Source of the DNA: Fonticula alba ATCC 38817
Lineage: Eukaryota; Protista; Nucleariida
NCBI GenBank assembly: GCA_000388065.2
Contig: KB932210.1
DNA length: 17,980 nt
Reading direction: 5' to 3' (one strand)
Positions 3-17,533 of the stretch are shown piece after piece (position 1 is the first letter of the stretch; each line of letters begins with the position of its first letter). The position numbers and the translations under genes were made by a program. The notes below the pieces were generated by a model. That model had not been told where the DNA came from. It was given only the letters and a program-made list of their open reading frames with translations, and made no database searches.

Positions 3-3000
3 GCAGGCTGGTGGCCGGCCGCCCTGCTGGTGCTGCTCGCGGCTCTGGTCGCGGTGCCGGCGGTCCGGCCGGCCGCCGGGCCGGACCTCTTCCTCCACGC
101 CGGGCCGCTGCCCACGGCGGCCCTGACCCCGTCGACGGTCTTCGTCGCGGCGCCGGGGCTGCCCTCGCTGGCCCATGTCCCGGGGCTGGCCTGGTCCGTG
201 TCCCAGCACCGGCAGGCGGACCCCCTGGCCCCGGTGTCGGAGTGCCGGTGGGGGTCCTTCTTCGAGGGCAGCCCCTCGGCCCGGGTGGACTCCCCCCGGC
301 AGGCCTCCCCGCCGGGCCCCGCGTCGCTGATGTACCTCCCGGCGGCCGGGGCCCCGGGGCCGGTCCTGCTCCAGCACACCGACCAGTGGGTGGCCCTGCT
401 GGAGTCGCCGACCGAGCACCCGCTGCCCGGGTCGCACAACACCCTGCTGGCCGCGGTGGCCGGCTCCCCGGGGCAGGTGGACCTGCTGGGCATCGTCGGC
501 CAGCCGGGCCAGGCCCCGCACGCGGTCTTCCTGGCCACCCTGGAGGCCGGGGCCCTGCGCCCGGTGGCCGGGGCCCTGCCCCCGCTGAGCGCCGGCATCC
601 TCGCGGCCCCCGGGCCCGGGCGGACCATCTACCTGTCCGGCGACTCGACGCTCTACCATGTGGCCTTCCTCGGGGCCGGGTCGGCCGGCGTCAGCCAGCT
701 GGCCCTCGACGCCGAGGCCGTCCGCATGGCCTCCACGCGGGTGGTCTCCCCGGCCTCCGAGTGCCCGGGCGCCGCGGATCTCCTGCTCCTGCTGGCCGAC
801 CGGTCGGTCCTGCTGCTGCCCTGCCAGGCCGGCGGCCACACCTCGGGCCCGGCCATGGCCGGGCCCCTGCCGGCCGGGGCCTCCACCGAGGGGCGCTTCC
901 TGGCCCCGCCGGCGCCCTCCCTGCACGAGGCCACCGGGCACTTCTACTTCATGGAGCCCGCGCCCGAGGGCGGCCTGGCCGGGCTGTGGCACGCGGCCCC
1001 CCGGCAGCCCGGCCAGGGGTTCCTCTGGCGCCGGGTCATCCTGCCGGAGGCGGCCCTCTCGGCGACCGTGGGCTCGCTGCAGCTGGCCCGGCTGCGCACC
1101 CTGCCCGAGCCGCACCCCGGCCAGTGGACCCTGGTGGCCGATGGCCAGCTGGTCCTCTTCGACACCGAGGCCTTCGGCTGTGCCACCGACCCGAGCATCG
1201 TCTGTGACGGGCCGACCGAGAGCACCGGCTCCAGGCATGGCTGGGCGTGCGCTCCGGGGCGCGCCCGGTCGCCCTTCCTCTCGGCCGACCAGCTGTGCGC
1301 CGGGTGCGCCGACGGCTTCTTCCTGGACCGGCCGGCCGGTGCGTCCCCCGCCCCTGCGCCGCCGCCGCCGCCGCGGCTCCCGGTACCTGCCTCTCGCCGC
1401 CGCCCCCCCTGACCGTCCTCTCTCCCTCTCTCTCTCTCCGCCCCCCGCCGCCCTCCCCACCACCGCCTCCGCGCAGATGAGCCGCCCTTCGCCGCCCCGT
1501 CGCATGGCTGCCTGCCCTGCCCGCAGGAAAACTGCACGACCTGCACCGCCGAGCACTGCCTCGTGTGCGCGCAGGGCTTCTTGCCGGAGCCCAGCGGCCC
1601 CGGCGGCAGGACAGCCTGCGTGCCGGGCTGCTCGGCCGGCTTCGCCGAACACCCCGGCGCCTGCCTGCCCGATGCCTTCTCCCCGCCGGCGGCCACCTTC
1701 ACCCTCCCCGAGTGGGAGACCTTCCCCGGGCTGCCGACCGGCACCATCGTCACCGGCCTCGGGGAGACCCACCTGATGGTGGCCCCCGACAGTGGGGACC
1801 TGTTCATCCCGGCCCCGGACGCCTCGGCCACCTCGGCCGCCTCGGCCACCTCGCCGGCCCCCGGCACCCGGGTCCTGCTCTTCACCGACCTGGGCGAGAC
1901 GCTGCTGCTGCCGGCGGCCGACATCGCCCGGCCCGGCGCCCCGGCCCCGGTCGAGGTGGGCCTCCTGGCCCCGGGCCCGGGGGAGCCGGTGGTGGCCATG
2001 GCCGAGGCCGGGCCCTTCCGGCATGCCGGCCGCCTGGCCCTGGGCCTGGTCCTGTGCGACCGCCTGGGCCGGGCCTTCGAGGTGTGGCCCGGCTGCCCGG
2101 ATGCCGGCGGGCCCGGCTGCAGCCTGGCCAGCCCGCCGCCCCGGCGGGACCTGGCCCCGGGCCAGTGCCTCGGTGTCCGGCGCCTGGACCGGGGGCATGT
2201 GCTCCTGGTGACGCGCGACGACCAGGGCATCCTCCTGCGGGCCGACCCGGCGGCCGGGCAATTCGTCGGCCTCGGCTCGCGGGTCCTCGGCATGGCCACC
2301 CTGCCCGGGGGCCCGGTGCCGGCCCGGTCCTTCCTGTCGGGCCCGGGGTCCGGCACGTGGGAGGTGCTTTCTGCCAGCCACTCCGGGGTGTCGCTGCTGC
2401 CGGGGGCCCTGCCCGTGGGGGACTCCCGGCGGGAGGCCCTGCTCGGGCTCCTGGCCCCGGCCGCGGCCCCCATGGGCCCCTCGGTGCCGGTGCTGCTGGA
2501 CACCGGCTTCGGCGGCGCGCCGGCCGGCCAGTGGCCCCCCCTGCCGGAGCTGGTGCTCGTCCACACCGCCGGGCCCAGCCTCCAGGTGTCCCGGGCCCCG
2601 GGGGACATGCTGCCGGCCGGCCGGTCCATGGGGGTCCCCTCGGCCGGGCAGACGCTGGGCCCGATGCCCGGGCCGGTGGCCGACACGCCCGGCGGCCCGG
2701 GGCTCCTGGTCCAGCCGGTGTCGCTGCCCTGGCAGCAGCCGCACTACCCGGCCGGGCTGCTGCTCCTGGGCCGGACCTTCTTCGCCCTGGTGCCGCTCTA
2801 CTGCCCGGCCCCGCCGGGGGGGCCGTGCGTCTTCCTCCGGCCGACGGTGCTGCCCCTGTCGGCCCCGATGCATGTGCCGGACAGCGCGCCCAACTGGCAG
2901 CCGGCCATCATCCGGGCCCCCTCGGCCCCGGGGCACGTCCTGACCATGGTCACCTTCGCCGAGGCCGTCGGCCCGATCAGCGTCTCCCTGCAGGTGGCCT

Positions 3001-6000
3001 GCCCGGCCGGGGCATTTGGCCTTGCCTGCGAGCCCTGCCACGGGGCCTGCCGCGAGTGCACCGGCCCCGGGCCCGGGGACTGCACCGCCTGCACGCTGGC
3101 CCTGGCCTCGGCGCCGGACGAGTGCATGGCCGCCTGCCCGGCCGGGCTGCTGGCCGACCTCGACGCCGGCCGGTGCACCTGCGACACCGGGTGCCTCGAC
3201 TGCGAGGCGGACCCCCACCCGGCCGGCGCCGGGGGCTACCGGTGCACCGAATGCTCGGCCGGGTATTTGTTGGTCGACGACCCGGCCCAGCCCGGGCACT
3301 GCCTGCCCTGTGACCGAGCCTGCGCCGGGTGCACGGCCGCCGGCGACCCGGCCGCCTGCACGGCCTGCGCCGCCGGCTGGCTGCTCCACGCCGGGGCATG
3401 TGTGGATGTCTGTCCGGCCGGGCACTGGCCGGACCCGGGGTCGGCCCGGTGCGCTCCCTGCCTGGCCGAGTGCGCGACCTGCAGCGGGCCGGACAGCTGC
3501 ACCGGCTGCCCGGCCGGGCACCATGTCGGGCCGGACGGCCTGTGCCACCGGTGCGACCTGTCCTGCGCCGAGTGCCAGCAGGCCGGCAGCTGCACCGTCT
3601 GCCAGCCGGGGCTGGTGTTCCTCCAAGCCAATGCCCAAGTCCCGTCGCTGTGTGGCCCGACCTGCCTGCCGGGGCAATTCGCCGGGGCCACCCGGTGCAC
3701 CGCCTGCCACCGGTCGTGCGCCCTCTGCACCGGCGAGGCCACCCGGTGCCAGGTGTGCGCCGTGGAGTATGGCTGGGCCTCGGCGCCGGCGCCGGCCCCC
3801 GGGCCCCCGGCGGCCCCGTGCCTGCTCTGCGAGATGGGCTGCACCTCCTGCCTGGCCGGCCGGTGTCTCACCTGCGAGGAGAGCCTCTTCCTGACGCCGG
3901 AGCACGAGTGCTGGGCCTTCTGCATGCCGGGGTTCTACCCGAATGGGGAGTCCTGCCAGCCGTGCGACCCGAGCTGCGGCGAGTGCCGGGGCCCCGGCCT
4001 GGACGAGTGCCTCTCCTGCCCGATGGACCTGCTCTTCCAGGAGTCCCTCTACCCGCTGGGGACGTGCCAGTCCGGCTGCCCGGACGGGTACTTCCTCCAG
4101 GCCGACTCGCAAGAGTGCCTGCCCTGCCATGCGGCCTGCTCCCGGTGCAATGGGCCCTCCGAGGGGGACTGCTGGCAATGCCGGGGGGATGCCCTGCTGC
4201 AGGGGACCCATTGCGTGCAGGCCTGCGCCCCGGGGCATGTGGCCGTCGGCGACCGGTGCCTCCCCTGCCATGCCTCCTGCGCCGAGTGCACCGGGGTCTG
4301 GGCGAGCGAGTGCACCGCCTGCTCGGCGGGGCTGCTGCCCCTGCCGGCCGGCGGCCGGCCCGACCGGTGTGTGGCCGGCTGCCCGGTGGGCTACCACACC
4401 GGCCCGGATGGCTGCACCCGGTGCTCGGATGACCAGTGCGCCAGCTGCCCGGGCGAGGCGGCCGCCTGCGGGCTGTGCACCGGCTCCTGGCTGCTGGCCG
4501 GGCAGGCCTGCCTGCCGACCTGCCCGGCGGACTCCCTGCCCCAGGGCAATGTGTGCACCGTGTGCCATGACTCCTGCGAGGCTTGCTACGGCCCCGGGCC
4601 GGGCCACTGCCTGTCCTGCAGCGCGGCCTTCCCGCTGATGGTGGAGGGCCACTGCCGGGACGCCTGCCCGGCCGGGACCTTCCCGGATGCCGGGACCTGC
4701 CTGCCCTGCCATGGGCTCTGCTCGACCTGCCACGGCCCGGAGCCCGGCCACTGCGCCACCTGCCCGGCCGGCGGCCTGCTCCACGGGGGGTTCTGCCTGG
4801 CCGAGTGCCCGGCCGCCTTCTTCCCCCAGGCCGGGGCGTGCCACCCCTGCCAGGCATCCTGCGCCACGTGCGACAACCGGACCACCTGCGCCACCTGCCC
4901 CGAGGGGGAGCTCCTCCAGCCCGGGGGCACATGCGCCAAGACCTGCCCGGCGGGCTGGCATGGCTGCGCCCCGGACCCCCGGTGCCGGGCCTGCCCGGAG
5001 GGCTGCGCGGCATGTCGGTCGGTCGGCGGCACCTGCCAGCCGGAGTGCACCGCCTGCTCCGGCGGGCTGCTCCTGTCGGCCGGCCAGTGTGTGGCCCAGT
5101 GCGCCGGGGATGAGTATGTCGTGGCCGGGACCGGCACGTGCGCCGCCTGCAGCGCCGCCTGCCGGACCTGCCTCGCGGCGGCCGACAAGTGCACCTCCTG
5201 CCCGGCCGGCCGGCTGCTCCACCCCCCGGCCGGGGCCTGCCTGGATGTGTGTCCGCCGGGCTCGGCCCCGGCCGGGGGGACCTGCCTCGCGTGTGTCGCC
5301 GGCTGCGACCGGTGCGAGGCCGGCCCCGGCCAGGAGGGCTGCGATCCCAGCCGCGAGGGGTTCCTCTCGTGCCCGGAGATCGCCGGGTGCCTGCGCTGCG
5401 CCGGGGGCCTGCTGCTGCTGAATGGGGCCGCCTGTGTGGACCGCTGCCCGGGGGGCTTCTTCGCGGACGCCCGGGCGCCGGCCGGCCCGATGTGCCGGGC
5501 CTGCGACCCGGCATGCGCCGCCTGCTCCGGGCCCGGGCCGGATGGCTGCCTGGCCCCGCCGGGGTCGCGGGCGTCGCGCATCGGCCTGGCCGTCGGCCTG
5601 TCCATGGGCCTGCTGATCTTGCTGATCCTGCTGCTGCTGCTGGTGCTGCTGTGCGTCCGCCGGCGCCACAAGGCCCACCCGGTGGCCAAGGCCGCGGCCG
5701 ACGCCGAGGACGCCACCATGCTGAGCACCCTCCTGGAGCTGGTGGCCCTGCCCGGGGCCCTGGTGGTGGCGGCCGACGTGGACTTCCGGCCGCTGGAGGA
5801 GGAGGAGGAGGAGGAGGCGGCCCCCCCGGGCGCCGGGGGCCCGGCCAGTGTGTACTCGGCGCAGGCCGTCAGCCCGGCCGTGGCCGAGCGGCTGGCCTGC
5901 CCGGCCGTGGTGGCCATCAAGAAGCCCAAGTCCCACCCGATGCCGCCCACGCAGCAGGCCCTCTTCCACAATGAGGTCGCCCTGATGTGGCAGCTGCGCG

Positions 6001-6692
6001 GGCATGGCAACATCGTCCGGCTCTTCGGCTACAGCCACAGCCCGCCGGCCATCGTGATGGAGCGCTTCGACAGCGACCTGCTGACCCTGCTCCGGTCCGG
6101 GGTGCCCCTGTCGCCGGTGCACCTGGCCGACATCATCCACCAGTGGGCCACCGGGCTGGAGGCCATGCACGCCAGCGGCCTGGCCCATGGCGACCTGAGC
6201 CCGGCCAATGTCCTGGTCAGCCAGGGCCATGATGGGGCCTGGCGCGCGGCCCTCGGCCACCTGGGGGCCAGCCGCAACTTCGCGCCCGACCGGCCCTCGG
6301 CCCTCCTCGACACCATGCCGCCCGACCTGCATGCCCTGACCGTGTGCTATGCCGGGCCCGAGGTCATCGCCGCCTTCCACCAGGGCGCCCCCCTGGAGCC
6401 GGGGCTCCGTCCGCCGGCCGACATCTATGCCGCGGCGGTCATGCTCAATGAGTGCATCGCCCGGGCGGCCCCCTGGCCGGGCATGGGCCTGCCGGGGGTC
6501 ATGGCCGCCGTGCTGGCCGGCCAGCGCCCCGGCACCGACGCCCTGCCCCTGGCCGGGCCCTTCGCCGAGGCCCGGCACCTGATCGCCGAGGCCTGGCACG
6601 CGGAGGCCTCTCGCCGGCCGGATGCCGGGGTCTTCCGCCAGCGGTGCGCCGCCCTGCACGTGGCGGCCGGCGGCCCGGCCACGCCGCCCTGA
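3..6692 (+). CDS. Gene 1 (5'-partial): giant receptor-like TKL (pseudo)kinase with furin-like Cys-rich ectodomain; exons <3..1338 and 1477..6692
   Basis: Frame 3 is open from base 3 (AGWWPAALLVLLAALVAVPAVRP, signal-peptide-like; the ATG is presumably upstream of the window). A phase-1 intron 1339..1476 joins ...DRPA/D-EPPFAAPSHGCLPC and runs into the 1563..6692 ORF. Spliced length is 6552 nt, a multiple of 3. It contains CxxC-rich repeats, a hydrophobic TM followed by RRRHK, and kinase motifs VAIKK, NEVALMW, HGDLSPANV, GHLG, YAGPE, DIYAAAV. Confidence 0.9.
1339..1476 (+). other. Spliceosomal intron 1 of gene 1 (138 nt, phase 1)
   Basis: GTGCGT donor at 1339, CTGAC branch-like motif 1409-1413, (CT)-rich pyrimidine tract, CAG acceptor 1474-1476. 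Splicing removes the in-frame TGA at 1410-1412 and restores the frame. Confidence 0.88.
3000..5549 (+). repeat. Furin-like / growth-factor-receptor Cys-rich repeat region of gene 1 (~850 aa)
   Basis: Recurring C..C...C..C.GP....C..C..G..L..G.C...CP.G.(F/Y) pattern in translation, e.g. CLPCHGLCSTCHGPEPGHCATCPAGGLLHGGFCLAECPAAFF. Family assignment is by motif recognition. Confidence 0.85.
5580..5657 (+). other. Single transmembrane helix of gene 1
   Basis: IGLAVGLSMGLLILLILLLLLVLLCV followed by the basic stop-transfer sequence RRRHK. Confidence 0.9.
5781..6660 (+). other. Kinase-fold domain of gene 1, TKL-like, probably catalytically impaired
   Basis: Subdomain motifs in order: GAGGPASVY, VAIKK, HNEVALM, NIVRLFGY, HGDLSPANV (6186-), GHLG (His at 6258-6260), YAGPE, DIYAAAVML, PW, RP...W...RRP. 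Confidence 0.85.
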
Positions 6693-6906
6693 GCCCCCGG
6701 CCCCGGGCCCGCGCCATTCCCCCGTCGTCCGCCCGAGCGGCCTCTCTTCCCCCGAGCGGCCCGTACTTCCATGCGGTCGGCCCCCGCCTCGGCCACCGGG
6801 CGGCCCCATCCCAATAGAGCATTTCATGGAGAATGCCCCGGGCCCGGGCGGCGCCCCCATGCGCCGGAGGTTGTTGCGCGAGGGGCGGCGAGGGGGCGGG
6901 GGGGGG

Positions 6907-7342
6907 NNNNNNNNNNNNNNNNNNNNNNNNNNNNNNNNNNNNNNNNNNNNNNNNNNNNNNNNNNNNNNNNNNNNNNNNNNNNNNNNNNNNNNNNNNNNNN
7001 NNNNNNNNNNNNNNNNNNNNNNNNNNNNNNNNNNNNNNNNNNNNNNNNNNNNNNNNNNNNNNNNNNNNNNNNNNNNNNNNNNNNNNNNNNNNNNNNNNNN
7101 NNNNNNNNNNNNNNNNNNNNNNNNNNNNNNNNNNNNNNNNNNNNNNNNNNNNNNNNNNNNNNNNNNNNNNNNNNNNNNNNNNNNNNNNNNNNNNNNNNNN
7201 NNNNNNNNNNNNNNNNNNNNNNNNNNNNNNNNNNNNNNNNNNNNNNNNNNNNNNNNNNNNNNNNNNNNNNNNNNNNNNNNNNNNNNNNNNNNNNNNNNNN
7301 NNNNNNNNNNNNNNNNNNNNNNNNNNNNNNNNNNNNNNNNNN
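6907..7342. other. Assembly gap (436 N)
   Basis: Run of N between a G-rich tract (~6884-6906) and a C-rich tract (~7379-7428). Confidence 1.
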
Positions 7343-7393
7343 TTTCCATTCTCCCACGGGCCGAATGCTCCCGCGGCGCCCCCCCCCCTTGAG

Positions 7394-7428
<35 letters not shown>
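7394..7428 (+). repeat. Poly(C) homopolymer (35 nt) upstream of the gene 2 start
   Basis: Read directly from the sequence. The length may be inexact next to a gap. Confidence 0.85.
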
Positions 7429-7429
<1 letters not shown>

Positions 7430-7471
7430 CCCCACCTCCCGCATCCCCACCCCCCGCACCCCGTGCACAGC

Positions 7472-8966
7472 ATGCCGCAGGTCGGCGCCTATGGCATAGT
7501 CCTGCTCTGGCTGCTGGCCCTGCTGCCGGCGGGGGCCTGGGGCGCCTCCCCTGTTGGGCCCCGGCCGGCCGGCCGGTCGGGCCCCGGCGCCGGTGCGCAG
7601 GCCCTCATCCTGGACGAGGCCCACCTCCAGCGCGCGCCCTTCCCCCTGTTTGAGCATGACGCCGAGTGGCATTTCCAGGTCGGGGAGTTTGTCCGCGACG
7701 AGCCAGCGAGCCTGGTTACCACGAGCCCGACCACCCGAGAGACTCGGCGCTACCAGTCGACCGCGGTCGATCTGGCCTCCTGGCCCGAGTCCCGCACCGG
7801 GACCCGCTTCAGCATGGACTCCGGACAGATCACCCTCCGGGCGCCCAGCAGCCAGAGCCCCATCACCCCGGGCGACATCTTTCCCATCCCCTTGGCCACT
7901 GGTGAAACCGGCCTCCTGGAGGCGACCCACGACCCGGTAGGGGACTCCCTGCTGATCACCTATGCCAGTGCCGTGGAAAGCAAACTGGACATCCAGGGGC
8001 GCCAAGTCCGGCTGCTGGCCATCCATGCCACCACCGCAACCAATACCCACGTCCTGGTGGCCAGCGACAGCGGCATGCTGGAGGTCGCCTCCATCGGCGG
8101 ATCCTCCGACATTGTCCCGGTTGTTGGCTCATACGGCACCGCGGGCGCCTTTGCCCCCCCCATGCGACAGGGCGACCCGCTGGCCGCCATCGCCGACTCG
8201 CAGGGCACCTTCCACGTGTGGACCCCGAACGCCTACTACACGGCGGTGTGGGAACCCCCGCAGTGGAGGCTGGTCAGTCAGCACCGCGACAGTGTGGTGC
8301 AGGTCCTGACCACACACATCCTGGACTCCGCAACCGAGAGCCGGATTATCCTGTACCGCGACCGGACGCTGGAGCTGTGCTATCACACCCTGACCGGGGC
8401 TTGCACCCTGCCGGTGACCACCACCCTGCCGGCGGAAGTCCCGCAGGACGGGCTGTTCATCAATGCCCCGGCCACCGAGTCTCGGGCGCCGCTCGGGTGG
8501 CTGATGTACGCCCCCCCCGGGGGGCACACCCTCTGGCGCATGGCTGCCCTGGAGAATGCCCAGCAGCTGTCCTGGCAGCCGCTCCGGCTGCCGGCCGGCA
8601 GCGAGCAGGTCGACTCCCTGCGCATGGTTCGCGTGTCCCTGGCCCTTGGCCACCCGCTGACCTGGGTCCCGGCCGGCCGGCACATGTACCTCGAGCCGGG
8701 GGACTTCCGCTGCCCGGGGGCGTCCGCCCAGCCGGATGTGTCCATCCAGTGCGGCAGCTCGGCCTCGAGCAACTGGAGCTGCGTCCCGGGCCGGGTGTTG
8801 GCGCCCTTCACCGTGCCGGGGCTCCTGTGTGGCGGGTGCGCTCGCGCCTGGTCCGCCACCGACCCGGCCAACCTGTCCAGTACGTTGGGCGCCGCGGGCC
8901 GGTGCCCCTGATGCTGCCTCCCTCTTACCCCCGCCCCCTCCCCCGGCTAACCAATGCCCCCTGCTC

Positions 8967-9049
<83 letters not shown>

Positions 9050-12000
9050 CCCCGCGGCCTGGCCCTCGGCCGGCCTGGCCATCGGACGCCGCCTCAGGCG
9101 GCTGCTCGCCCTGCACCGGCCAGTGCGATGTGTGTGCCGGCACCGGGCCCACGGACGATTGTCTGGTTTGCCGCTCGGGGTTCGTGCTGTCGGTCGACCC
9201 GGCCACCGGCCGGGCGTCATGCGCCAGCAGCTGCCCGGACCAGCAGCCCGCCCTCAGCGGTGTGTGCCCCGGTGCCAGCGGGGTCGGGGCCCTGGACATG
9301 GCCGCCACCTTGACCAGCGTCCTGGTCACCATGCCCGCCCTGCCGGACCCCATCCCTGTGGCCTTCCTCGCCAGGACCTCCCTGCGGGTGGACCCCCAAA
9401 GCAACGAGGTCCAGCTTGTGGGCCCCATGGCCGACGAGCCGGAACGCTGGCTGGCCTTCCCCTCGGCCGAGGTGGATTTGCCGCCGCTGCTCCTGGACCC
9501 GGCGGACCTGCTGGCCGGGACGTCGGTCTCCGCCAGCCGGGCCGACTTCCTGCCGACGCGCGCCCCGGTGGCCGCCTACGCCGAGTCGTCGGTGGCCGCG
9601 ACGGCCACCGGCCGCCAGATGCTGGCCCTCCTGTGCGAAGCGTCCTCCGGCCAACTGATGCGCGTCACCTTTTCCCAAGCCACCGCCGCCCCGTCCGAGC
9701 TTCAGGTCGACAGGGCGAATGTGGGCCTTCTCAGCGACTGCAGGCGCCTGGAGCGCCTCGGCCCGGACCTGGTGGCCCTCATGGACAAAGACCACTCCCA
9801 GGTGCACCTTTTCCGCATGGACCCGGCCAACGGGCTGCTGGCCCACGCGGCCCTGGCCGACACCACCACCCGGCCGGCCCTCCTGCCGCTCGAGTGGCCG
9901 GCCATCCTGCGCCTGGGGCCCGACCTCTCGTCGATCCACCCGCTGGACATGCTCCTGGCCAATGACCCTCGAGCCACGCCGCGCCGGGAGGCCCTCGGCG
10001 GGGTCACCGGCTCCTGGCACTCGACGGTCCTGCAGCCGGGGGCCGGCCGCCCGGGCGAGCTGGTCCTCTCGGCGTTGGTGCCCTCCGGCGGGACCTCCCA
10101 CCGGTGGCTGGCCCAGCACATCCCGCAGGGCGGCCGCCTGCAGGGCCGGACCACCGACCTCCCCCGGGTGGAGTACGACCTGGGCTCGGTGTCGGACCCG
10201 GGCTCCGGCAAGTACCAGGTCCTGGCGGCCCCGGTCCTCGGCCAGGCCGGCGAGGTCGCCACCGCCCTGGTGGTCCTGACCTCGAAGGAGGTCGGGGTGG
10301 CGGCGCTGCACTGTCCGGCCGGGCGGATTGCCTGCCGGCTCCGGCCGGCGGTCTTCCGGCCGCTGGCCCGGCCGCTCGGCAGCCCGGACTCCCTGGTGGT
10401 CGTGGAGCTGCCGGCTCCGATGGGCCCCGGCGGCGGGGCCCATGCCCATGGCGGCTCGCCGGGCGGCCTGTGGATGGCCCTGGCCCTGGTCTCGGGCCTG
10501 GCCGGCGGGGGCCCCATCTTCCGGCTGGACATCGACCTCATGCCCCCCTGCCCAGAGGGGACATTCACGCCGGACTGCCGGGCCTGTGTGGCCGGCTGCG
10601 TCCAGTGCACCGGGCCCAACCCCCGCGATTGTGTCCGGTGTGCCGCCTTCCTGCCAAGCCAGCCGGAAGCCTGCCTGGCGGCCTGCCCGGCCGGCATGGC
10701 CCCCGGGCCGGATGGCGCCTGCGGCTGCCACCCCCTTTGCACAAATTGCCACCACTCGACCGATCGCTACGAGTGCCTGGCATGCGATGCCGGGCATGTG
10801 CCCGGCCCGCCGGACCCGGCCGACCCCGGCGGCCTGGGCCCGGACCGGTGCCTCGCCTGCCGGGCGAATTGCCACCGGTGCACGGCCCCCGGGCCGGACG
10901 GCCCCTGCGACCTGTGCAGTGTGGGCTTCTTCCTGCAGCCGGGCAGCGGCTGTGTGGCCACCTGCCCGGCGGGCATGTGGCCGGATGCCGACAACCGCGT
11001 CTGCGCCCCCTGCCCCGGGCCATGCACCTCCTGCTCCTCGGCCAGCGACTGCACCGCCTGTGCCGCCGGGCACTTCCTCAATGCCAGCCGCATGTGCCAG
11101 CCCTGTGACAGCTCCTGCACCGCCTGCACCGACAGGGCCACCTGCACCATCTGCCGGCCGGGGATGATCTTCCTGTCGCCCGTTCCCCAGCAGGCGTCCC
11201 TCTGCGGCAGCACCTGCCCCCCGGGCGAGTATGTCGGCGCCGGCCGGTGCGCCGCGTGCGATGGGTCGTGTGAGCTGTGCGCCGGCGGGCCGGACCGGTG
11301 CCGGGTGTGTGCGGCGGGCTTCCGCTGGGGCGCGACCCCGGGCCCCGGCGGCACCGGCACGTGCGTCGCCTGTGAGCCGGGGTGCGCCTCCTGCACGAGC
11401 GCCGCATGTTTGTCCTGCGAGGCGGGCCTCCTGCTCACGGCGGCCGGCGCATGTGTCAGCGCCTGCCCAGCCGGGTCGTTCAGCAACGGCGAGTCGTGCC
11501 AGCCGTGCGACATTAGTTGCGCCGCCTGCGCCGACGGCCAGCCGGACCAGTGCACGGGCTGTGCCGCCGGGCTGGAACTTGTCGAGGTCAGCCCCGGTGT
11601 CGGCACCTGCGTGTCCGGCTGCTCGGAGGGCCAGTACCGCGCGGGGGCCGAGTGCCTGCCCTGCGACGCGGCCTGCGCCACGTGCAACGGCCCCACGGAC
11701 AAGGACTGCTGGCGGTGTGCCTCCGGCGTCCTGCAGGGCGGCGACTGCGTGCAGGCCTGCGCCGCCAGGCATGTGGCCGTGGGCGACCGGTGCCTGCCGT
11801 GCCATGTCTCCTGCGCCGAGTGCATGGGCACTCGGAGCACCGAGTGCCTGCCGGACTGCGCACCCGACTTGCTGGCCCTGCCGGCCGGGCAGTCGCCCAC
11901 GCGCTGCGTGCCGGCCTGCCCGGCCGGATACAACACCTCAATGAGCGGCTGCCGCCAGTGCACGGAGCACTGCGCCAGCTGCCCGGAGTCGAACGACACG

Positions 12001-15000
12001 TGCGCCCTGTGCGAGCGCGGGTGGCTGCTGGCCAGCCCGGACTGCGTGACCGAGTGCCCGGCCGGGTCGATGGCCCAGGGCGGGCTGTGCGCCACCTGCC
12101 ACGCCACCTGCGCCACATGCTTCGGCCCGGCGCCCGAGCACTGCCTGTCATGCGCCCCGGGCACGCCGCTCATGCTGGACACCAGCTGCGTGGCCGCCTG
12201 CCCCGGCACGCACTTCGCCGCCGGCGGGGCCCTCTGCCTTCCCTGCAGCCCGTACTGCGGCCGGTGCTCCGGGCCGGGGCGCGACCAGTGCACGGCCTGC
12301 CCGGCGGACCGGGTGCTCGTGCCGGCCGGCGAATGCCTGGGCGCCTGCCCGGCCGGGCAGTATGCCGACGCCGGCCGCGTGTGTCGCCCGTGCGGGCCGA
12401 CCTGCACCGCCTGCTCCGGCGGGCCAGACCGCTGCACCGCCTGCCAGGCGCCCCGGCTATTGCACGCCGGGGCCTGTGTGGCCGGCTGCCCGGCGGGCCA
12501 CTTCCCATGCGCCCCCTCGAGCCAGTGCGTCGCCTGTCCCCCCGGCTGCGCCAGCTGCGCGGCCGCCCCGGCGACCGGCGCCCCCTGCACGGCCAGCTGC
12601 ACCGCATGCGGCCCTGGGCTCGCGCTGTCCCTGTCGGGGGCCTGCCAGGCGGCCTGCCCGGCCGGGGAGTACCTCCCGGCCGGCTCGTCCACCTGCGAGG
12701 CCTGCGCGCCGGACTGCGCCACCTGCCACGGCCGGGCCGATCGGTGCACGGCATGCCGCAACTCGGCGGCCTGGCTGATGGCCGACAGCGGGCTCTGCGC
12801 CAGTGCCTGCCCCGGGGCCGGCTTCGCCATGCTCCCGGACGGCCGGGCCTGCCTCCCGTGCCAGGCCGGCTGCGAGCACTGCCCGGCCCCCGACGGGGCC
12901 GGCCCCTGCACCATCGCCCCGACCGGGGCCCTTGCCTGCCCGGGGGTGACCGCCTGCCACCGGTGCATGGCCGGCTACCTGCTGCTGGCCGGCAGCCAGT
13001 GCGTGGCCACCTGCCCGGCCAATACCTTCCCCGCGTGGGATGCCCCCCTGCCCGTGTGCGGCCCCTGCCACCCCAAGTGCGCGGGCACGTGCACCGGCCC
13101 GGAGCAGGCGGACTGCTCCGGGTCCGCCGGCGGCTCCCCCGGCCGGCGGGACCTCGGTGCGTGCCGGCGCCGGCGCCCCCCTTCCTCCTGCCCCGCTGTG
13201 CTTTGGCTGTGGACTAACGTGCTGCCCGGTCGCCCTCCATGGCCAGCCCTCGGCCTGGGCCTCGGCCTGGGGCTGCTGCTGCTGCTGCTGCTCCTGGCCC
13301 TGGCCATCTTCCTGCTGCTGCGCCTGCGCCGGGCCCGCCGGCCCAAGGATGTGGTCCGTCGGAAACCCCCGGGCCCCTCTGCCGTCTCTGCTCGCCCACC
13401 TCCTCCGCCTCTCCTGCGGTCCCCCTCCCGACCCAGTCCGCCGAGTCCGACGAAAGTGCGCCGTCCCCCCCCCCTCCCCGAGTCGGCCGGCTGGCATGCG
13501 GCCCCTCTGTCTTCTTTCCTCTGTGTGCCCCCAAACAACTCCCCGCCCCCCGCTGCCACGCTCTCTGACTCTCCTTCTCTCCCTCTCGCCGGCAGACTCC
13601 ACGGTGCTCAACACCATCATCGGTCCGCTGCCCCCGCCGCGTGCTCCCCCTCCGTGCCCCGTTGCTCTCGCCCCCCGCCCGGCCGCCTCTCACCCATTCC
13701 CCCCCCCCCCTTCCGCCCCGCCGGCGCGACCACAGAGATGTCCCTCCCCGGCGCCATGCAGGTGGACCTGGCGGCGGACTTCACCCCGATCGATGGCCCC
13801 CTCGGCGCGGGGGCCCAGGCGAGCGTCTTCGCTGCGCGCGCCGTCGGCCCCGGCATCTCCACGCGCCTCGGCTGCCCGGACACCGTGGCCATCAAGCAGA
13901 TGAAGGGTACGCCCATCGGCCTGGCCACGCGCCCAGCCGGTGCTCGGCCGCCGGCCCCTGTCTCACTGACGGACCCCCGCCCCCCCCCCCCTTCCCCCTG
14001 CCAGCCGCCGCCATGAAGCCCACACAGGTGGCCCTCTTCCAGAATGAAATCGCCCTCATGTGGTACGCCCCCGGCTTGTCCCCGCGCCCGCGCCAGCCCG
14101 ACGCACGGCTCTGACAGACCCCCCTGCATGGGGCGCAGGCTCCTCCGCGAGCACCCGGCCATCGTCCGGCTGTACGGCTACAGCGACCAGCCGCCGGCCA
14201 TCATCATGCACCGGTACCAGACGGACCTGGCCACGCTGCTGCACTCGGAGGTGGCCCTCTCGCTGGGCGCCCTGCTGGACATCGCCCAGCAGTGGGCCTC
14301 CGGGCTGGAGGCCATGCACGCCAATGGCGTGGTCCACTGCGACCTGAAGCCGGCCAATGTCTTTGTCAGCCAGCAGCCGGCCGGGTCATGGACGGCGGCC
14401 CTCGGCGACCTGGGCACCTCGCAGAACCTGAGCACCGACCGGTCCTCGGCCCTGGTGACCACGGCCCCGGAGCTGAATGCCATGACCGCGCGCTATGCCG
14501 CGCCCGAGGTCCTGGTGGCCTTCCGGCGCCGGCGCCCGCTGGAGCCAAGCCACCTCTCCGCGGCGGACATCTTCTCGGCGGCCGTCCTGCTTTGGGAGAG
14601 CCTCTCCCGGGCCATCCCCTGGGAAGGTGCGTCCGCGGGGCCAGCTGCCCGGAGCCGGGGGGCGGGGCGGGGGGGCGGGAGACACGGGGCGCCGCATGCG
14701 CTGCAAGCTTCTTCTCTTTCTTTCGCACAACCCCACACTTGCTGACCTCCATCGGGCGTGTTGCCTCCCACCCCCCTTGCCCCTCGTGCCCGCCATGCTG
14801 GCCATGATGATGACACTGGCGGCGGCGGGGGCGGCGACGACGACGACACCAACGGCGAATGGGATAGCATGCAACTTTGAGCAGATCTCCGCGGCCGTGC
14901 AAGCCGGCGACCGGCCGGACGTCTCGACCGCCGTGGCCCCGCTGGGCGCCCAGGCTCCCAACCTCGGCCAGATGGCCGCCGACCTCCTGGCCCGGGCCTG

Positions 15001-15085
15001 GAACCAGGACCCGCTGGCCCGCCCGCCGGCCGCCACCTTCCGCCAGGTGTGCGCCTCGATGGCGGTCTTCTCGTCAGGGCAGTAG
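7472..15085 (+). CDS. Gene 2: giant receptor-like non-RD TKL Ser/Thr kinase, 9 exons (7472..8879, 9098..13156, 13247..13353, 13437..13455, 13596..13622, 13736..13906, 14005..14062, 14139..14626, 14868..15085), 2184 aa
   Basis: ATG 7472 starts MPQVGAYGIVLLWLLALLPAGAWG (signal peptide). All eight introns are GT..AG and phase-compatible, and the total is 6555 nt. The spliced kinase is collinear with the intronless gene 1 kinase at the junctions (KQMK/AAAMKPTQVALFQNEIALMW vs KKPKSHPMPPTQQALFHNEVALMW; PWEACNFEQISAAVQAGDRP vs PWPGMGLPGVMAAVLAGQRP). Motifs: LGAGAQASVF, VAIKQ, HCDLKPAN, GDLG, YAAPE, DIFS. Stop TAG 15083-15085. Confidence 0.88.
8880..9097 (+). other. Intron 1 of gene 2 (218 nt, phase 1)
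   Basis: GTACGT donor 8880, GCTAAC branch-like motif 8946-8951, CAG 9095-9097 is the first AG after it. The acceptor is somewhat uncertain because the intron contains a long (GT)n. Confidence 0.75.
8969..9044. repeat. (GT)38 microsatellite inside intron 1 of gene 2
   Basis: 76 nt of perfect GT repeat read directly. Confidence 0.97.
10549..13116 (+). repeat. Furin-like Cys-rich repeat region of gene 2 (~856 aa)
   Basis: Same repeat pattern as gene 1 and largely collinear with it (e.g. CTICRPGMIFLSPVPQQASLCGSTCPPGEY vs CTVCQPGLVFLQANAQVPSLCGPTCLPGQF). Confidence 0.85.
13157..13246 (+). other. Intron 2 of gene 2 (90 nt, phase 1)
   Basis: GTGCGT donor, GACTAAC branch motif 13212-13218, CAG 13244-13246. 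Splicing places the TM helix directly after RRDL. Confidence 0.88.
13247..13320 (+). other. Transmembrane helix of gene 2 (in its own exon, 13247..13353)
   Basis: ALGLGLGLGLLLLLLLLALAIFLLL followed by RLRRARRPK. Confidence 0.9.
13354..13436 (+). other. Intron 3 of gene 2 (83 nt, phase 0)
   Basis: GTCCGT donor, pyrimidine-rich body, CAG 13434-13436. Confidence 0.72.
13437..13455 (+). CDS. 19-nt micro-exon 4 of gene 2 (SAESDE + A)
   Basis: Flanked by CAG and GTGCGC. It is needed to reconcile the phase-0 donor at 13354 with the phase-1 acceptor at 13595, giving KDVSAESDENSTVLNTIIE, which matches gene 1 KAAADAEDATMLSTLLE. Confidence 0.72.
13456..13595 (+). other. Intron 4 of gene 2 (140 nt, phase 1)
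   Basis: GTGCGC donor, CTGAC at 13565-13569, CT-rich tract, CAG 13593-13595. Confidence 0.75.
13596..13622 (+). CDS. 27-nt micro-exon 5 of gene 2 (..STVLNTII..)
   Basis: CAG and GTCCGC flanks. The translation matches gene 1 ATMLSTLL. Confidence 0.82.
13623..13735 (+). other. Intron 5 of gene 2 (113 nt, phase 1)
   Basis: GTCCGC donor, poly-C tract, CAG 13733-13735. G|AG reconstitutes the Glu of IIEMSLPG. Confidence 0.82.
13907..14004 (+). other. Intron 6 of gene 2 (98 nt, phase 1)
   Basis: GTACGC donor, ACTGAC branch-like motif 13965-13970, poly-C, CAG 14002-14004. Confidence 0.9.
14063..14138 (+). other. Intron 7 of gene 2 (76 nt, phase 2)
   Basis: GTACGC donor, CTGAC 14111-14115, CAG 14136-14138. 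TG|G restores the Trp of ALMW-LLREH. Confidence 0.9.
14627..14867 (+). other. Intron 8 of gene 2 (241 nt, phase 1)
   Basis: GTGCGT donor, GCTGAC 14741-14746, TAG 14865-14867. The spliced product aligns gap-free to gene 1. Confidence 0.82.
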
Positions 15086-15284
15086 GCCGCACCCGGCTGG
15101 GCCAGGCCGGCGCCCCGGCATCGCCGCCGCCCCGCGGCCATGGTGCATGGACGGGCGGGCCGCGCTGGCCCCGTCAGCACGCGCAAATACACGCACTCAC
15201 ACGCACACACGCACGCACGCACCGGAATACGCCTCGATGGCTGGCAGCCCGCCCGGCCGGTCGGCGGCCCGTACGCGCGACCAT

Positions 15285-15877
15285 CGGGGGAGGGGCACTG
15301 TCGCGAACCGGCGCATGCCCGGAACTGTGGTTGCCGGACTTCGGAAAGGGGCACCTTGGCACACACGGGGCTGGCCAGACGCCCAAGGGGCCGGCCGGGT
15401 CTTGGAGCAATGCCCGCCCCGTTTCACGACGCTCTTCCGATCTCGGGGGAGGGGCACTGTCGCGAACCGGCGCATGCCCGGAACTGTGGTTGCCGGACTT
15501 CGGAAAGGGGCACCTTGGCACACACGGGGCTGGCCAGACGCCCAAGGGGCCGGCCGGGTCTTGGAGCAATGCCCGCCCCGTTTGCCAATAATACCTCGGC
15601 ATTAATAAAGGCCCCTTTCACGCGGGAGGGCCCCACACGCCTGAACCGATGATAGCCGGCCGTCTGGCGCGCTGGCTTCTTCTTGGCGCTCCCCGGCGGG
15701 ACCAGGTGCCACAGGGCCGACGGTCACGCCGGCCGCCCTGGTCGACCCTCGAGATCGGAAGAGCGTCGTGACCGATGATAGCCGGCCGTCTGGCGCGCTG
15801 GCTTCTTCTTGGCGCTCCCCGGCGGGACCAGGTGCCACAGGGCCGACGGTCACGCCGGCCGCCCTGGTCGACCCTCG
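15285..15877. other. Assembly artefact: adapter-flanked sequencing fragment causing two false direct repeats
   Basis: CACGACGCTCTTCCGATCT at 15425-15443 and its reverse complement AGATCGGAAGAGCGTCGTG at 15752-15770 are Illumina paired-end adapter sequence. Exact duplications: 15285-15424 = 15444-15583 (140 nt) and 15645-15751 = 15771-15877 (107 nt). Confidence 0.95.
15604..15609 (+). promoter_or_regulatory. Candidate AATAAA polyadenylation signal for gene 2
   Basis: AATAAA within a short AT-rich patch (CAATAATAC..ATTAATAAAG) in otherwise very GC-rich DNA downstream of the stop. Use of this signal in this organism is unverified. Confidence 0.45.
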
Positions 15878-16121
15878 TCGGGGAACGGGCGCACCCCCGG
15901 CGCATGGCGGACCCTGCGCCTGATCTCTGCGTGATCCCGCGACTGCCAACTCTAGGACCCACTCCCCACGCCCCCGGGGGGCGGCGCCCTTCATGGCTCT
16001 CGCGCTCCCGGGCCAGGTGCTCGCCCGGGCCGGCGCGGTGTGAGCCCTGCGCAGGGAGCCCGCCGCCGTCGGGGCTGCTCCCCAACAGGCAGGGGGGGGG
16101 GGACATATTCACGCTGCTGGC

Positions 16122-16171
16122 NNNNNNNNNNNNNNNNNNNNNNNNNNNNNNNNNNNNNNNNNNNNNNNNNN
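16122..16171. other. Assembly gap (50 N)
   Basis: Run of N downstream of a G11 run (16092-16102) and about 50 nt before the gene 3 ATG. Confidence 1.
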
Positions 16172-16224
16172 CCCCTTCCCGCCCCCGTTATCCCCCTGAC
16201 ACCGATCGTCGCCCGGAAAGCACC

Positions 16225-17533
16225 ATGCCGTGGTTGGTGCGGCGACCGGCCGGGCCCCGGCCACCGTCACCCGCGCGGCCGGTGCTCGCCCTGGCGCTGG
16301 CACTGACGCTGCTGCTGCTGCTGTTGCCGGCACATGGCAGCGCGCCGGCCGGTCTCTTTCTCCTGGAAGCGCCGCGCCTGCTGGGGAAGTCCCCCTCCGG
16401 CGGGCAGGCGCTCCTGCTGCCAGGCGAGCCGATGGTCCACCATTCCGCGCCCGGGGACCAGGTCAACATCTTTAAGCAGGGCATCAACCTTGATCTCTTC
16501 TCGGACGCGCGTCTGGGGTCGGTCTTCTTCCCGGATCCCGACCTCATCCTGCGCTTTGCCGGGGTTCCGGACAGCCTGACCAGCGAGCCGATGCTGGTCC
16601 CCATGCCGGGCGAGCTGCCGAGCCTGGTCTGGCTGTCTGGAAGCCGGGTGGGTGTCTCGACCGAGGACCTGGTGCACACCTTCGACCTGCCGGCCGGCGG
16701 CCCGGCGCGCCTGCTGGCGGCCGTGTCCCGCTCTGCCAGCGACACGTCAATCCTCCTGGGCCTGGGCACCGGTAAAACCCTTGTCCTGCGCTGTTACGCG
16801 TCCGCCTGGTCGCTCATTGAGATCCCCACCGGCGCCAATGGCGGCACGGCCGGCCTGCCGGGGCACCTGTACGTGGCCGCCTCCATGTCCGGGTGGGTGT
16901 GGGCACCGGAGGGCGGCCCGATGAGGGGCTTCCCGGTCGACGACGAGCCGGTCCTCCGGGTGGCCGCCACGCGCTTCATCACCGACGACCCGGATTCCCT
17001 GGACCTGGTCATCGTGACGGACCAGCGCCTGCGGGTTTTGGTCGGCCTAAAGGACAACCACCAGCCCGCCCGCGTGCTGGATGCCCCGCTGTCGGCCGAG
17101 CAGAGGGACCTCTCCACCGAGCTGGTGCCCGAGCTGGCGCCCGGTGCCTCGCCATCGGGCTTCCTCTATCTCCTCAGCAATGGGACCACCCTGTGGCGGG
17201 TGTCGGCCCTGCCGGACAATGCGCTGGCCTGGCAGCGGGTCAGCACCCCGTCGGGCTTCTTCGCCGCCCCCAGCCGGGTCAGCCTCATGAGCATGGACCT
17301 GGGCGCCGCCCCGGCCGGGCCGGCCGAGCGCTGGGTCTTGGTCCGGGATGGCAGGGCCTTCTTCACCAACGAGCAGTTCGGCTGCGGGGTGGACGCGTCG
17401 ATTGTGTGCGATGCCGCTGCCCATGCGTGGCGCTGTGCGCCCGGCAGGCGCCTTTCCCCGCTCCGGGCGGCCGGCGAGCTGTGCGCCGGCTGCTCGGACG
17501 GCTTCTACCCGGTGCCGGTGGGCGCCGAGCGGC
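16225..17533 (+). CDS. Gene 3, exon 1 (3'-partial gene): signal peptide plus domain A of a third paralogous receptor
   Basis: GCACCATG start, hydrophobic VLALALALTLLLLLLPAHG, and a C-terminal motif FGCGVDASIVCDAAAHAWRCAPGRRLSPLRAAGELCAGCSDGFY homologous to gene 1 FGCATDPSIVCD..GWACAPGRARSPFLSADQLCAGCADGFF. A phase-1 GTGCGT donor at 17534 sits at the same position as intron 1 of genes 1 and 2. The kinase is not in the window and is inferred. Confidence 0.85.

What the first reader, a model, noticed from the sequence alone, without database searches (positions are those of the whole stretch)
3..17533. Tandem array of non-RD receptor kinases with divergent ectodomains: a candidate pattern-recognition or allorecognition receptor locus in a microbial eukaryote
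Seen in sequence: three head-to-tail paralogues. In genes 1 and 2 the Cys stalk and kinase align closely, whereas the N-terminal domains are hardly alignable by eye outside their C-terminal third. The catalytic loop is HCDLKPAN (gene 2) or HGDLSPAN (gene 1) instead of HRD. Established knowledge: non-RD kinases, often with Cys or Gly replacing Arg, are characteristic of innate-immune pattern-recognition receptors such as plant FLS2, EFR and XA21 and animal IRAK1; from memory, FLS2 carries HCDLKPAN. Inference: a clustered family with constant signalling parts and variable sensing parts may be an independently evolved microbe-sensing or self/non-self receptor system. I know of no characterisation of it, but I cannot search.
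Basis: partly seen in the sequence, partly recalled or inferred. Interest (0 to 1): 0.85.

Follow-up and report, generated by a model that had tools for sequence, protein, structure and literature searches.

The report
Fonticula double-propeller receptor kinase array
Three neighbouring genes of the slime-mould-like amoeba Fonticula alba belong to an undescribed family of about 80 surface receptors found so far only in this species, each with its own sensing head on a shared stalk and kinase, but what they sense is unknown and the "immune-type kinase" argument is weak.

Summary
The window (Fonticula alba, scaffold KB932210.1) carries three head-to-tail genes. Each encodes a signal peptide, domain A, a short Cys linker, domain B, about 18 furin-like Cys repeats, a TM helix and a kinase. 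Both assembly gaps are intergenic.

Median identity across paralogues is 24% for A, 23% for B, 50% for the stalk and 60% for the kinase.

New here:
- A and B are two unrelated, Pfam-less seven-bladed beta-propellers.
- A head profile finds about 70 proteins among 1.84 billion representatives. All 20 checked are F. alba, and no two heads exceed 57% identity.
- At least 35 members carry the kinase. Several have only a TM helix and a short tail.
- Stalk and kinase hold tracts 98% identical in DNA, and head similarity does not track kinase similarity. This points to gene conversion.

The non-RD argument weakens. Gene 3 is HRD, and the family splits HCD 18, HGD 4, HRD 13, with about 10 switches between one-base neighbour codons. 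The nearest solved kinases are RAF, not IRAK or plant RLKs. Gene 1 lacks the catalytic-loop Lys and the DFG Asp, so it is a probable pseudokinase. Gene 2 is transcribed and spliced.

A varied sensor repertoire is supported. An immune or allorecognition role is untested. The scan noted this family before on neighbouring DNA (s1-065497, s1-066504).

The parts
3..6692 (+). Gene 1 (annotated as P0001, 2074 aa, from an internal Met). Exon 1 runs from 3 to 1338, the phase-1 intron from 1339 to 1476, and exon 2 from 1477 to 6692 with no further intron. It is a probable receptor pseudokinase.
   Evidence: The start codon is lost in the N run upstream of the window. No exact RNA contigs were found in 4 runs.
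60..1338 (+). Gene 1 domain A, a seven-bladed beta-propeller ending in a small Cys knot.
   Evidence: Alignment A1 and the fold model of the gene 2 homologue.
1662..2996 (+). Gene 1 domain B, a second seven-bladed beta-propeller unrelated to A.
   Evidence: Alignment A2, fold results and hhalign of A against B with no match.
2994..5585 (+). Gene 1 Cys-rich stalk, with 140 Cys in 864 aa and about 17-18 furin-like repeats of roughly 50 aa.
5781..6689 (+). Gene 1 kinase-like domain. It keeps VAIK but reads HGDLSPAN (6186-6209) and has GHLG in place of the DFG motif. It is the only family member lacking both the catalytic-loop Lys and the DFG Asp.
   Evidence: (alignment to solved kinases).
6907..7342 (.). 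Assembly gap in the intergenic spacer between gene 1 and gene 2, flanked by poly-G and poly-C.
7472..15085 (+). Gene 2 (XP_009497501.1, P0064, 2184 aa). Exons: 7472-8879; 9098 to about 13196; about 13287 to 13354; a micro-exon near 13433-13452; 13596-13622; 13736-13906; 14005-14062; 14139-14626; 14868-15085.
   Evidence: The last four introns were seen as GT..AG joints in RNA contigs, and exact contigs cover 10088-15183.
7544..8879 (+). Gene 2 domain A, a beta-propeller. The model has pLDDT 67 and pTM 0.74.
8880..9097 (+). Gene 2 phase-1 intron holding a (GT)40 microsatellite at 8969-9049.
9265..10545 (+). Gene 2 domain B, a beta-propeller. The model has pLDDT 78 and pTM 0.80.
10543..13190 (+). 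Gene 2 Cys-rich stalk. It passes Pfam GF_recep_IV and holds tracts 98% identical in DNA to the paralogue P0014.
13736..15085 (+). Gene 2 kinase exons. All catalytic residues are present: VAIK, the alphaC Glu, HCDLKPAN at 14335-14358, GDLG and AAPE.
15284..15877 (.). Intergenic assembly artefact: two perfect duplications, each joined by Illumina adapter sequence at 15431-15443 (-) and 15752-15764 (+).
16122..16171 (.). Assembly gap in the intergenic spacer, 54 nt upstream of the gene 3 ATG.
16225..17980 (+). Gene 3 (5' part of XP_009497502.1, P0037). Signal peptide and domain A run to about 17540, followed by an intron with an 18-nt minisatellite at 17683-17976. The rest lies outside the window and includes an HRD kinase. 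The annotated 3462-aa product fuses gene 3 with the head of a fourth gene.

Best explanation
The three genes belong to a large family of type I surface receptors, about 80 genes, found so far only in Fonticula alba.

Each protein has a membrane-distal head made of two unrelated seven-bladed beta-propellers, A and B, neither matching any Pfam family. The head sits on a long, disulphide-rich rod of about 18 furin-like repeats. A single TM helix, a juxtamembrane stretch of about 60 residues and a divergent RAF-like (TKL-like) Ser/Thr-type kinase follow.

Inferred mechanism:
- Each head binds its own extracellular ligand.
- Binding clusters or re-orients the receptors, and the kinase signals inward.
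- Kinase-less members (TM plus short tail) and the pseudokinase gene 1 act as co-receptors or decoys.

Evolution: heads diverge without being homogenised, while stalk and kinase are repeatedly exchanged between paralogues by gene conversion. The result is a repertoire with variable heads and constant signalling parts.

The ligand class is not known. Candidates are bacterial prey, other microbes, conspecific cells or matrix.
For: Shown.
- Architecture and gene models.
- Organism and annotation.
- Gene 2 is transcribed and spliced.
- A and B are confident all-beta models (pTM 0.74 and 0.80). They match hundreds of seven-bladed propellers, with Z of 15 and 18.6, and no family stands out. The only strong AlphaFold DB matches are two hits whose organism the tool masked. 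Their A0A058 accessions fall in the series that one search shows for F. alba proteins, so I read them as paralogues.
- A and B are unrelated to each other.
- The head profile finds 70 proteins at E<1e-30 among 1.84e9 representatives, and 20 of 20 sampled are F. alba.
- Architecture counts are 24 A-B-kinase and 26 A-B, with eight members carrying a TM and a tail of 27-81 aa.
- Median identity is A 24.5, B 23.4, stalk 50.5 and kinase 59.7%.
- Nearest-neighbour identity is 35% for heads and 70% for kinases.
- Tracts 98% identical in DNA, third codon positions included, occur in the stalk and kinase.
- Rank correlation of pairwise similarity falls along the gene, from A-B 0.52 to A-stalk 0.31 to A-kinase 0.06.
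- Catalytic residues are invariant in all aligned kinases except gene 1.
- All genes in the two arrays on this scaffold lie on the + strand.

Inferred: ligand binding by the head, activation by clustering, and co-receptor roles.
Against: - No ligand, binding test or kinase assay exists.
- Head divergence could reflect relaxed constraint rather than selection for diversity. dN/dS is uninformative because synonymous differences saturate near 0.5 at this GC3.
- Many models without a kinase or TM may be truncated by the numerous assembly gaps, so the count of receptor-like proteins is uncertain.
- Gene 1 showed no exact RNA contigs in four small runs.
- The propeller models rest on 18-19 sequences from one species, and domain A has a pLDDT of only 67.
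- The decay of correlation along the gene could partly reflect saturation in A.
Confidence: 0.7

Rival explanations
1. One reading: the family is a pattern-recognition or prey-recognition system. Heads bind bacterial surface molecules, and the mostly non-RD kinases signal for phagocytosis or defence, as plant PRR kinases and Entamoeba transmembrane kinases do.
For: - F. alba feeds on bacteria (established knowledge).
- The family is large, lineage-specific and tandemly arrayed, each member has a unique head, and kinase-bearing and kinase-less members coexist.
- 22 of 35 kinases are non-RD.
- Non-RD kinases are linked to innate immunity across kingdoms (PMC8463890).
- Entamoeba PATMK has an ectodomain of CXXC repeats, a TM and a kinase, and takes part in phagocytosis (PMC2211552).
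- Domain A's structural neighbours include the PLL and PHL fucose-binding propeller lectins.
Against: - RD status flips about 10 times within the family through single-base codon changes, and gene 3 is RD.
- The nearest solved kinases are RAF, not IRAK or RLK.
- The lectin matches do not stand above other propellers.
- No expression or binding data exist.
Confidence: 0.25
2. One reading: the family mediates kin or allorecognition during aggregation and sorocarp formation, with heads polymorphic between strains.
For: - F. alba is an aggregative organism (PMC5055082).
- Heads are extremely diverse and the loci are clustered and recombining.
Against: - Known allorecognition systems rest on a few highly polymorphic loci, not about 80 fixed paralogues.
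- Only one isolate is sequenced, so polymorphism is unknown.
- No pairing of receptor and ligand genes is evident.
Confidence: 0.1
3. The family serves adhesion, matrix or general environmental signalling. Head divergence reflects old duplications and weak constraint, and the apparent constancy of stalk and kinase comes mainly from gene conversion.
For: - Conversion tracts are present and head and kinase histories are decoupled.
- Synonymous sites in heads are saturated, so the heads may simply be old.
- Extracellular propellers on Cys-rich stalks occur in adhesion receptors (LGI1 EPTP).
Against: - About 80 different heads, each kept intact as a folded propeller with conserved core positions, argue for retained and distinct functions.
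- Conserved catalytic residues argue for signalling.
Confidence: 0.2

Closest known systems
Entamoeba histolytica transmembrane kinases (TMKs, e.g. PATMK)
   Same: Both are large families in an amoeba of type I proteins with a CXXC-rich, VSP-like ectodomain, one TM helix and a divergent kinase of unclear specificity. Both families include truncated and kinase-dead members. PATMK is a phagocytosis receptor (PMC2211552, PMC2880585). The stalk here hits Pfam VSP and GF_recep_IV.
   Different: No Entamoeba protein appeared among the kinase hits. The TMK ectodomain described in that paper is Cys repeats, with no double propeller head reported. The organisms are unrelated (Amoebozoa versus Holomycota), so this is a parallel invention.
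Plant RLK/RLP repertoires, including the non-RD PRRs FLS2, EFR and XA21
   Same: Both are tandemly arrayed, lineage-expanded families with variable ectodomains, conserved kinases, kinase-less partners and pseudokinases. Many members are non-RD.
   Different: The ectodomains here are propellers plus furin-like repeats, not LRR or LysM. The nearest solved kinases are RAF rather than RLK/Pelle/IRAK. RD status is unstable within the family.
EGFR/insulin-receptor type and holozoan receptor tyrosine kinases with furin-like Cys-rich regions
   Same: Both have a Cys-rich furin-like rod (GF_recep_IV passes its Pfam threshold), a single TM helix and a cytoplasmic kinase.
   Different: The catalytic loop here is the Ser/Thr type, DLKPxN. 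Fonticula has no tyrosine kinases (PMC4342544). The stalk is far longer, at about 18 repeats, and there are no L domains.
RAF-family (TKL group) kinases
   Same: They are the best solved-structure match for the family kinase profile (E=4e-25). GenBank names most members 'TKL protein kinase'.
   Different: RAFs are cytoplasmic RD kinases. Identity is low, and Pfam Pkinase scores above PK_Tyr_Ser-Thr. No reference phylogeny was built.
Extracellular seven-bladed propellers (LGI1 EPTP domain, Photorhabdus PLL/PHL lectins)
   Same: They share the fold and an extracellular ligand-binding role.
   Different: Sequence identity is 8-12%, and they do not stand out from intracellular WD40 or DDB1 propellers. 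There is no Pfam hit and no conserved sugar-binding motif was tested.

Membership tests
Eukaryotic protein kinase superfamily, catalytically competent | Gly-rich loop, VAIK Lys, alphaC Glu, HxD Asp, catalytic-loop Asn, DFG Asp and APE Glu. | tested here: met
   All are invariant or nearly so in 17 aligned family kinases, and gene 2 has every one. Pfam Pkinase scores 105-110 bits. Gene 1 is the exception: it has Ser for the catalytic-loop Lys and His for the DFG Asp.
Non-RD kinases | A residue other than Arg before the catalytic Asp (HxD). | tested here: inconclusive
   Met for gene 1 (HGD) and gene 2 (HCD), not met for gene 3 (HRD). Family-wide the counts are 18 HCD, 4 HGD and 13 HRD, with about 10 state changes on the tree.
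RLK/Pelle/IRAK kinase family (home of the plant PRRs and IRAK1) | The kinase domain groups with IRAK, Pelle and plant RLKs rather than with other TKL families. | tested here: not met
   The top 60 solved-structure matches for both the family profile and a single member are all B-Raf or C-Raf. No IRAK or plant RLK ranks above them. This is a similarity ranking, not a phylogeny.
Receptor kinase (type I membrane topology) | N-terminal signal peptide, one TM helix and a C-terminal cytoplasmic kinase. | tested here: met
   Hydrophobic N-termini are seen in genes 2 and 3. A single TM helix lies about 330-350 residues from the C-terminus in nearly all kinase-bearing members. Surface localisation cannot be tested here.
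Furin-like / growth-factor-receptor Cys-rich repeats | A match to Pfam GF_recep_IV or Furin-like above threshold, with a regular 8-Cys repeat. | tested here: met
   GF_recep_IV scores 36.8 bits against a cut-off of 29.5 on the gene 2 stalk. There are 140-142 Cys per roughly 880 aa with spacing of about 47-52 aa.
Seven-bladed beta-propeller fold (domains A and B) | A confident all-beta model that superposes on solved seven-bladed propellers over most of its length. | tested here: met
   pTM is 0.74 for A and 0.80 for B. Z is 15.4 and 18.6 with about 290-315 residues aligned. Blades were not counted directly. These are predictions only.
Innate-immune pattern-recognition or allorecognition receptor | Binds microbial or non-self ligands; excess polymorphism or positive selection in the sensing domain; expression induced on contact. 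| not testable with these tools
   There is one sequenced isolate. dN/dS is saturated. The RNA data are small contig sets without conditions.

The most novel reading that the evidence does not exclude
Fonticula alba, sister lineage to the fungi (which are reported to lack receptor-kinase architectures), independently built a repertoire of about 80 recognition receptors. Unique double-propeller heads are selected for diversity, while gene conversion keeps a common stalk and kinase. The amoeba uses this repertoire to tell apart bacterial prey or self from non-self during collective behaviour. That would make it a surface-receptor recognition system analogous to plant RLK/RLP immunity.
Probability: 0.3. 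Interest if true: 0.85.

Novelty: new variant of a known kind. Interest (0 to 1): 0.62.

Why it matters
Fungi are reported to lack receptor-kinase architectures (PMC6733946), and Fonticula has no tyrosine kinases (PMC4342544) and no detected GPCRs (supplement of PMC6733946). A family of about 80 receptor kinases and receptor-like proteins would be roughly 1.3% of the proteome, assuming about 6,300 proteins; that total is only inferred from the numbering of EukProt ids seen. A family of that size could be a major surface-sensing system in this organism.

It offers concrete candidates for prey sensing or cell-cell recognition in an independently evolved aggregative multicellular lineage. It adds two new extracellular propeller families. 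It is also a clear example of mosaic evolution, with heads diverging while stalk and kinase are homogenised.

It shows as well that non-RD status alone is a poor predictor of immune function outside plants and animals.

Tried and rejected
- dN/dS by Nei-Gojobori per domain gave values above 1 in A and B. I rejected these as meaningless. Synonymous differences plateau near 0.5 because of extreme GC3, and the alignments are at about 24% identity.
- Pfam found no family for A, B or the short linker.
- hhalign of A against B showed no relation, so the head is not an internal duplication.
- Foldseek and VIA-align against PDB and AlphaFold DB gave only the generic propeller fold, with no specific family.
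- Reads laid on gene 1 showed only 20-30 nt pieces of paralogue contigs, so expression is not shown. Contigs cannot prove absence.
- ARAGORN found no tRNA in the window, although a note on a neighbouring window describes a tRNA-Val cassette.
- A literature search found no paper on this family and none holding the string HCDLKPAN.
- An assembly-artefact explanation for the paralogues was rejected. The copies differ throughout, gene 2 has matching spliced RNA, and the annotated proteins are distinct.
- I could not build a kinase tree with TKL, IRAK and RLK reference sequences, and could not census RD status in the rest of the F. alba kinome, because no reference set is reachable with these tools.
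Full report
**Source and context.** The window is 77% G+C. A kinase-region search returned proteins that NCBI names as Fonticula alba. Exact look-ups place the genes on scaffold KB932210.1 (619 kb) of GCA_000388065.2. The window starts directly after a run of N of at least 9.7 kb.

**Gaps, tested first.**
- The gap at 6907-7342 lies between the gene 1 stop codon (6690-6692) and the gene 2 ATG (7472).
- The gap at 16122-16171 lies between the gene 2 stop (15083-15085) and the gene 3 ATG (16225).
- Both are intergenic, so no frame has to be carried across them.
- The mechanical ORF 15775-17694 that reads through the second gap is not the gene. The annotated product starts at 16225 with a signal peptide.

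**Gene models.**
- Gene 1: exon 1 runs from 3 to 1338 and a phase-1 intron from 1339 to 1476. Exon 2 is one uninterrupted exon from 1477 to 6692. Its start codon is in the upstream gap, which explains the internal Met of the annotated product.
- Gene 2 (XP_009497501.1, 2184 aa): exon 1 runs from 7472 to 8879. A phase-1 intron holding a (GT)40 repeat follows. Then comes a long exon and a run of short exons.
- RNA support for gene 2: contigs from four runs show GT..AG joints for introns 13623-13735, 13907-14004, 14063-14138 and 14627-14867. Exact contigs cover 10088-15183. Gene 2 is therefore transcribed and spliced.
- Gene 3 (XP_009497502.1): only the signal peptide, domain A and the start of an intron lie in the window.
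- The annotated 3462-aa product of gene 3 has the domain order A-B-kinase-A-B. It fuses gene 3 with the head of a fourth gene, so the array continues beyond the window.
- For gene 1, only 20-30 nt pieces of paralogue contigs were laid at 98% likeness or more. Its expression is not shown.

**Architecture.** All members share one plan:
- a signal peptide;
- domain A, about 430 aa;
- a Cys linker, about 55 aa;
- domain B, about 430 aa;
- a stalk of 860-900 aa with about 140 Cys in repeats of roughly 50 aa, which makes about 18 furin-like repeats. GF_recep_IV passes its Pfam threshold and VSP scores below it;
- one TM helix and a juxtamembrane stretch of about 60 aa;
- a kinase of about 300 aa.

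**The head.** Neither A nor B hits any Pfam family.
- AlphaFold2 models built on family alignments are all-beta. A has pLDDT 67 and pTM 0.74. B has pLDDT 78 and pTM 0.80.
- Foldseek and VIA-align match them to hundreds of seven-bladed propellers. These include LGI1 EPTP, Sec12, DDB1 BPB, Nup120 and the PLL/PHL lectins. Z reaches 18.6 for B and 15.4 for A, with 290-315 residues aligned and 8-12% identity. No family stands out.
- In AlphaFold DB clusters, only two hits score strongly (E=1e-15 to 1e-20). The tool masked their organism. Their A0A058 accessions fall in the series that one search shows for F. alba proteins, so I read them as paralogues.
- A and B show no profile-profile similarity to each other.

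**Family size and range.** A profile of A-linker-B was searched against 1.84 billion cluster representatives.
- It found 70 proteins at E<1e-30. The weaker hits match only the Cys linker.
- All 20 members sampled by exact look-up are F. alba proteins in one-member clusters.
- Local HMMs give these architectures: 24 A-B-kinase, 26 A-B, fragments, and three fused models.
- Eight members have a TM helix followed by only 27-81 residues, which makes them receptor-like proteins. Because the arrays are riddled with gaps, some kinase-less models are probably truncations.
- On this scaffold there are two arrays, at about 292-385 kb and 533-565 kb, with every gene on the + strand. Locus tags show further arrays on other scaffolds.

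**Divergence pattern.**
- Median pairwise identity is A 24.5%, B 23.4%, stalk 50.5% and kinase 59.7%. For gene 1 against gene 2 the values are 24, 24, 45 and 52%.
- Across 70 A domains the nearest neighbour is 35% identical at the median and 57% at most. For kinases it is 70% at the median and 87% at most.
- dN/dS cannot decide between positive selection and relaxed constraint. Synonymous differences plateau near 0.5 at this GC3.
- The stalk and kinase contain 60-codon windows that are 98% identical in DNA, third positions included, against a background of 55-69%. Examples are gene 2 with P0014, P0002 with P0014, and P0013 with P0014. The last pair links genes about 240 kb apart.
- The rank correlation of pairwise similarity decays with distance along the gene: A-B 0.52, A-stalk 0.31, A-kinase 0.06.
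- Together these point to gene conversion or recombination that homogenises the constant parts and leaves the heads alone.

**Kinase.**
- The Gly loop, VAIK Lys, alphaC Glu, HxD Asp, catalytic Asn, the DFG-equivalent GDLG, APE Glu and the subdomain IX and XI residues are conserved across the family.
- Gene 1 alone has Ser for the catalytic-loop Lys and His for the DFG Asp, so it is a probable pseudokinase.
- The catalytic loop DLKPxN is of the Ser/Thr type. Pfam Pkinase scores above PK_Tyr_Ser-Thr.
- The best solved relatives are B-Raf and C-Raf, at E=4e-25 with the family profile and 1e-14 with one member. They fill the top 60 places. The GenBank label 'TKL protein kinase' is therefore reasonable, and membership of the IRAK/RLK family is not supported.
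- The HxD residue is Cys in 18 members, Gly in 4 and Arg in 13 of 35. Gene 3 is HRD.
- On a maximum-likelihood tree the state changes about 10 times. Well-supported branches force 3-4 changes per state. Gene 2 (HCD) and gene 3 (HRD) are sisters.
- In the window the codons are TGC (gene 2) and GGC (gene 1), each one base from an Arg codon CGC. The Arg codon was not read here.

**Interpretation.** The data support a repertoire of surface sensors with variable heads and constant signalling parts. This is shown for anatomy and evolution and inferred for mechanism. The closest functional analogue is the Entamoeba TMK family: a CXXC-repeat ectodomain, a TM helix and a kinase, with PATMK acting in phagocytosis (PMC2211552). 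That makes prey sensing a reasonable guess for a bacterivorous amoeba. Allorecognition has no direct support.

**Literature.** I found no paper describing the family.
- Suga et al. report no tyrosine kinases in Fonticula (PMC4342544).
- Kiss et al. report 323 Ser/Thr kinases and no GPCRs in Fonticula, and no receptor-kinase architectures in fungi (PMC6733946).

**Earlier notes of this scan.** Other notes on this and neighbouring windows cover the same family: s1-065622, s1-066309, s1-066310, s1-065497, s1-066504 and s1-066506. I re-tested the pseudokinase claim and the divergence gradient, and both hold.

Noticed in passing
window 15284-15877: Two perfect 'tandem duplications' (159-nt and 126-nt units) are each joined by Illumina adapter sequence, at 15431-15443 on the minus strand and 15752-15764 on the plus strand. 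This is adapter-chimera assembly artefact in the public genome, close to the gap at 16122.
   Followed up: yes
window 1477-6692 versus 9098-15085: Gene 1 has no intron from the linker to the stop codon. Gene 2 has about seven short introns around the TM and kinase region, four of them confirmed by RNA.
   Followed up: partly
window 1339-1476, 8880-9097 and about 17540 onward: In genes 1 and 2 the signal peptide plus domain A forms a single exon ending in a phase-1 intron. Gene 3 looks the same at the homologous place, but its donor site and phase were not checked. The gene 2 intron holds a (GT)40 repeat and the gene 3 intron an 18-nt minisatellite with 16 copies.
   Followed up: partly
window 6890-6906 and 7385-7430: Long poly-G and poly-C runs flank the first gap upstream of gene 2. 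They are probably the cause of the sequencing gap. A neighbouring-window note describes a poly-C as part of a repeated intergenic cassette.
   Followed up: no
L001 1-9671 (record 346168-355838); L004 from 324787; L002 292266-297160: Very large N runs break the receptor arrays, so family size, gene order and many 'kinase-less' models in the public annotation are unreliable. The annotation also fuses neighbouring genes (P0037, P0039, P0026).
   Followed up: partly
Runs X1-X4 laid on window 700-6692: Contigs of 3.3-4.5 kb that touch gene 1 only in 20-30 nt pieces may come from other family members, which would then be well expressed. Their origin was not checked.
   Followed up: no
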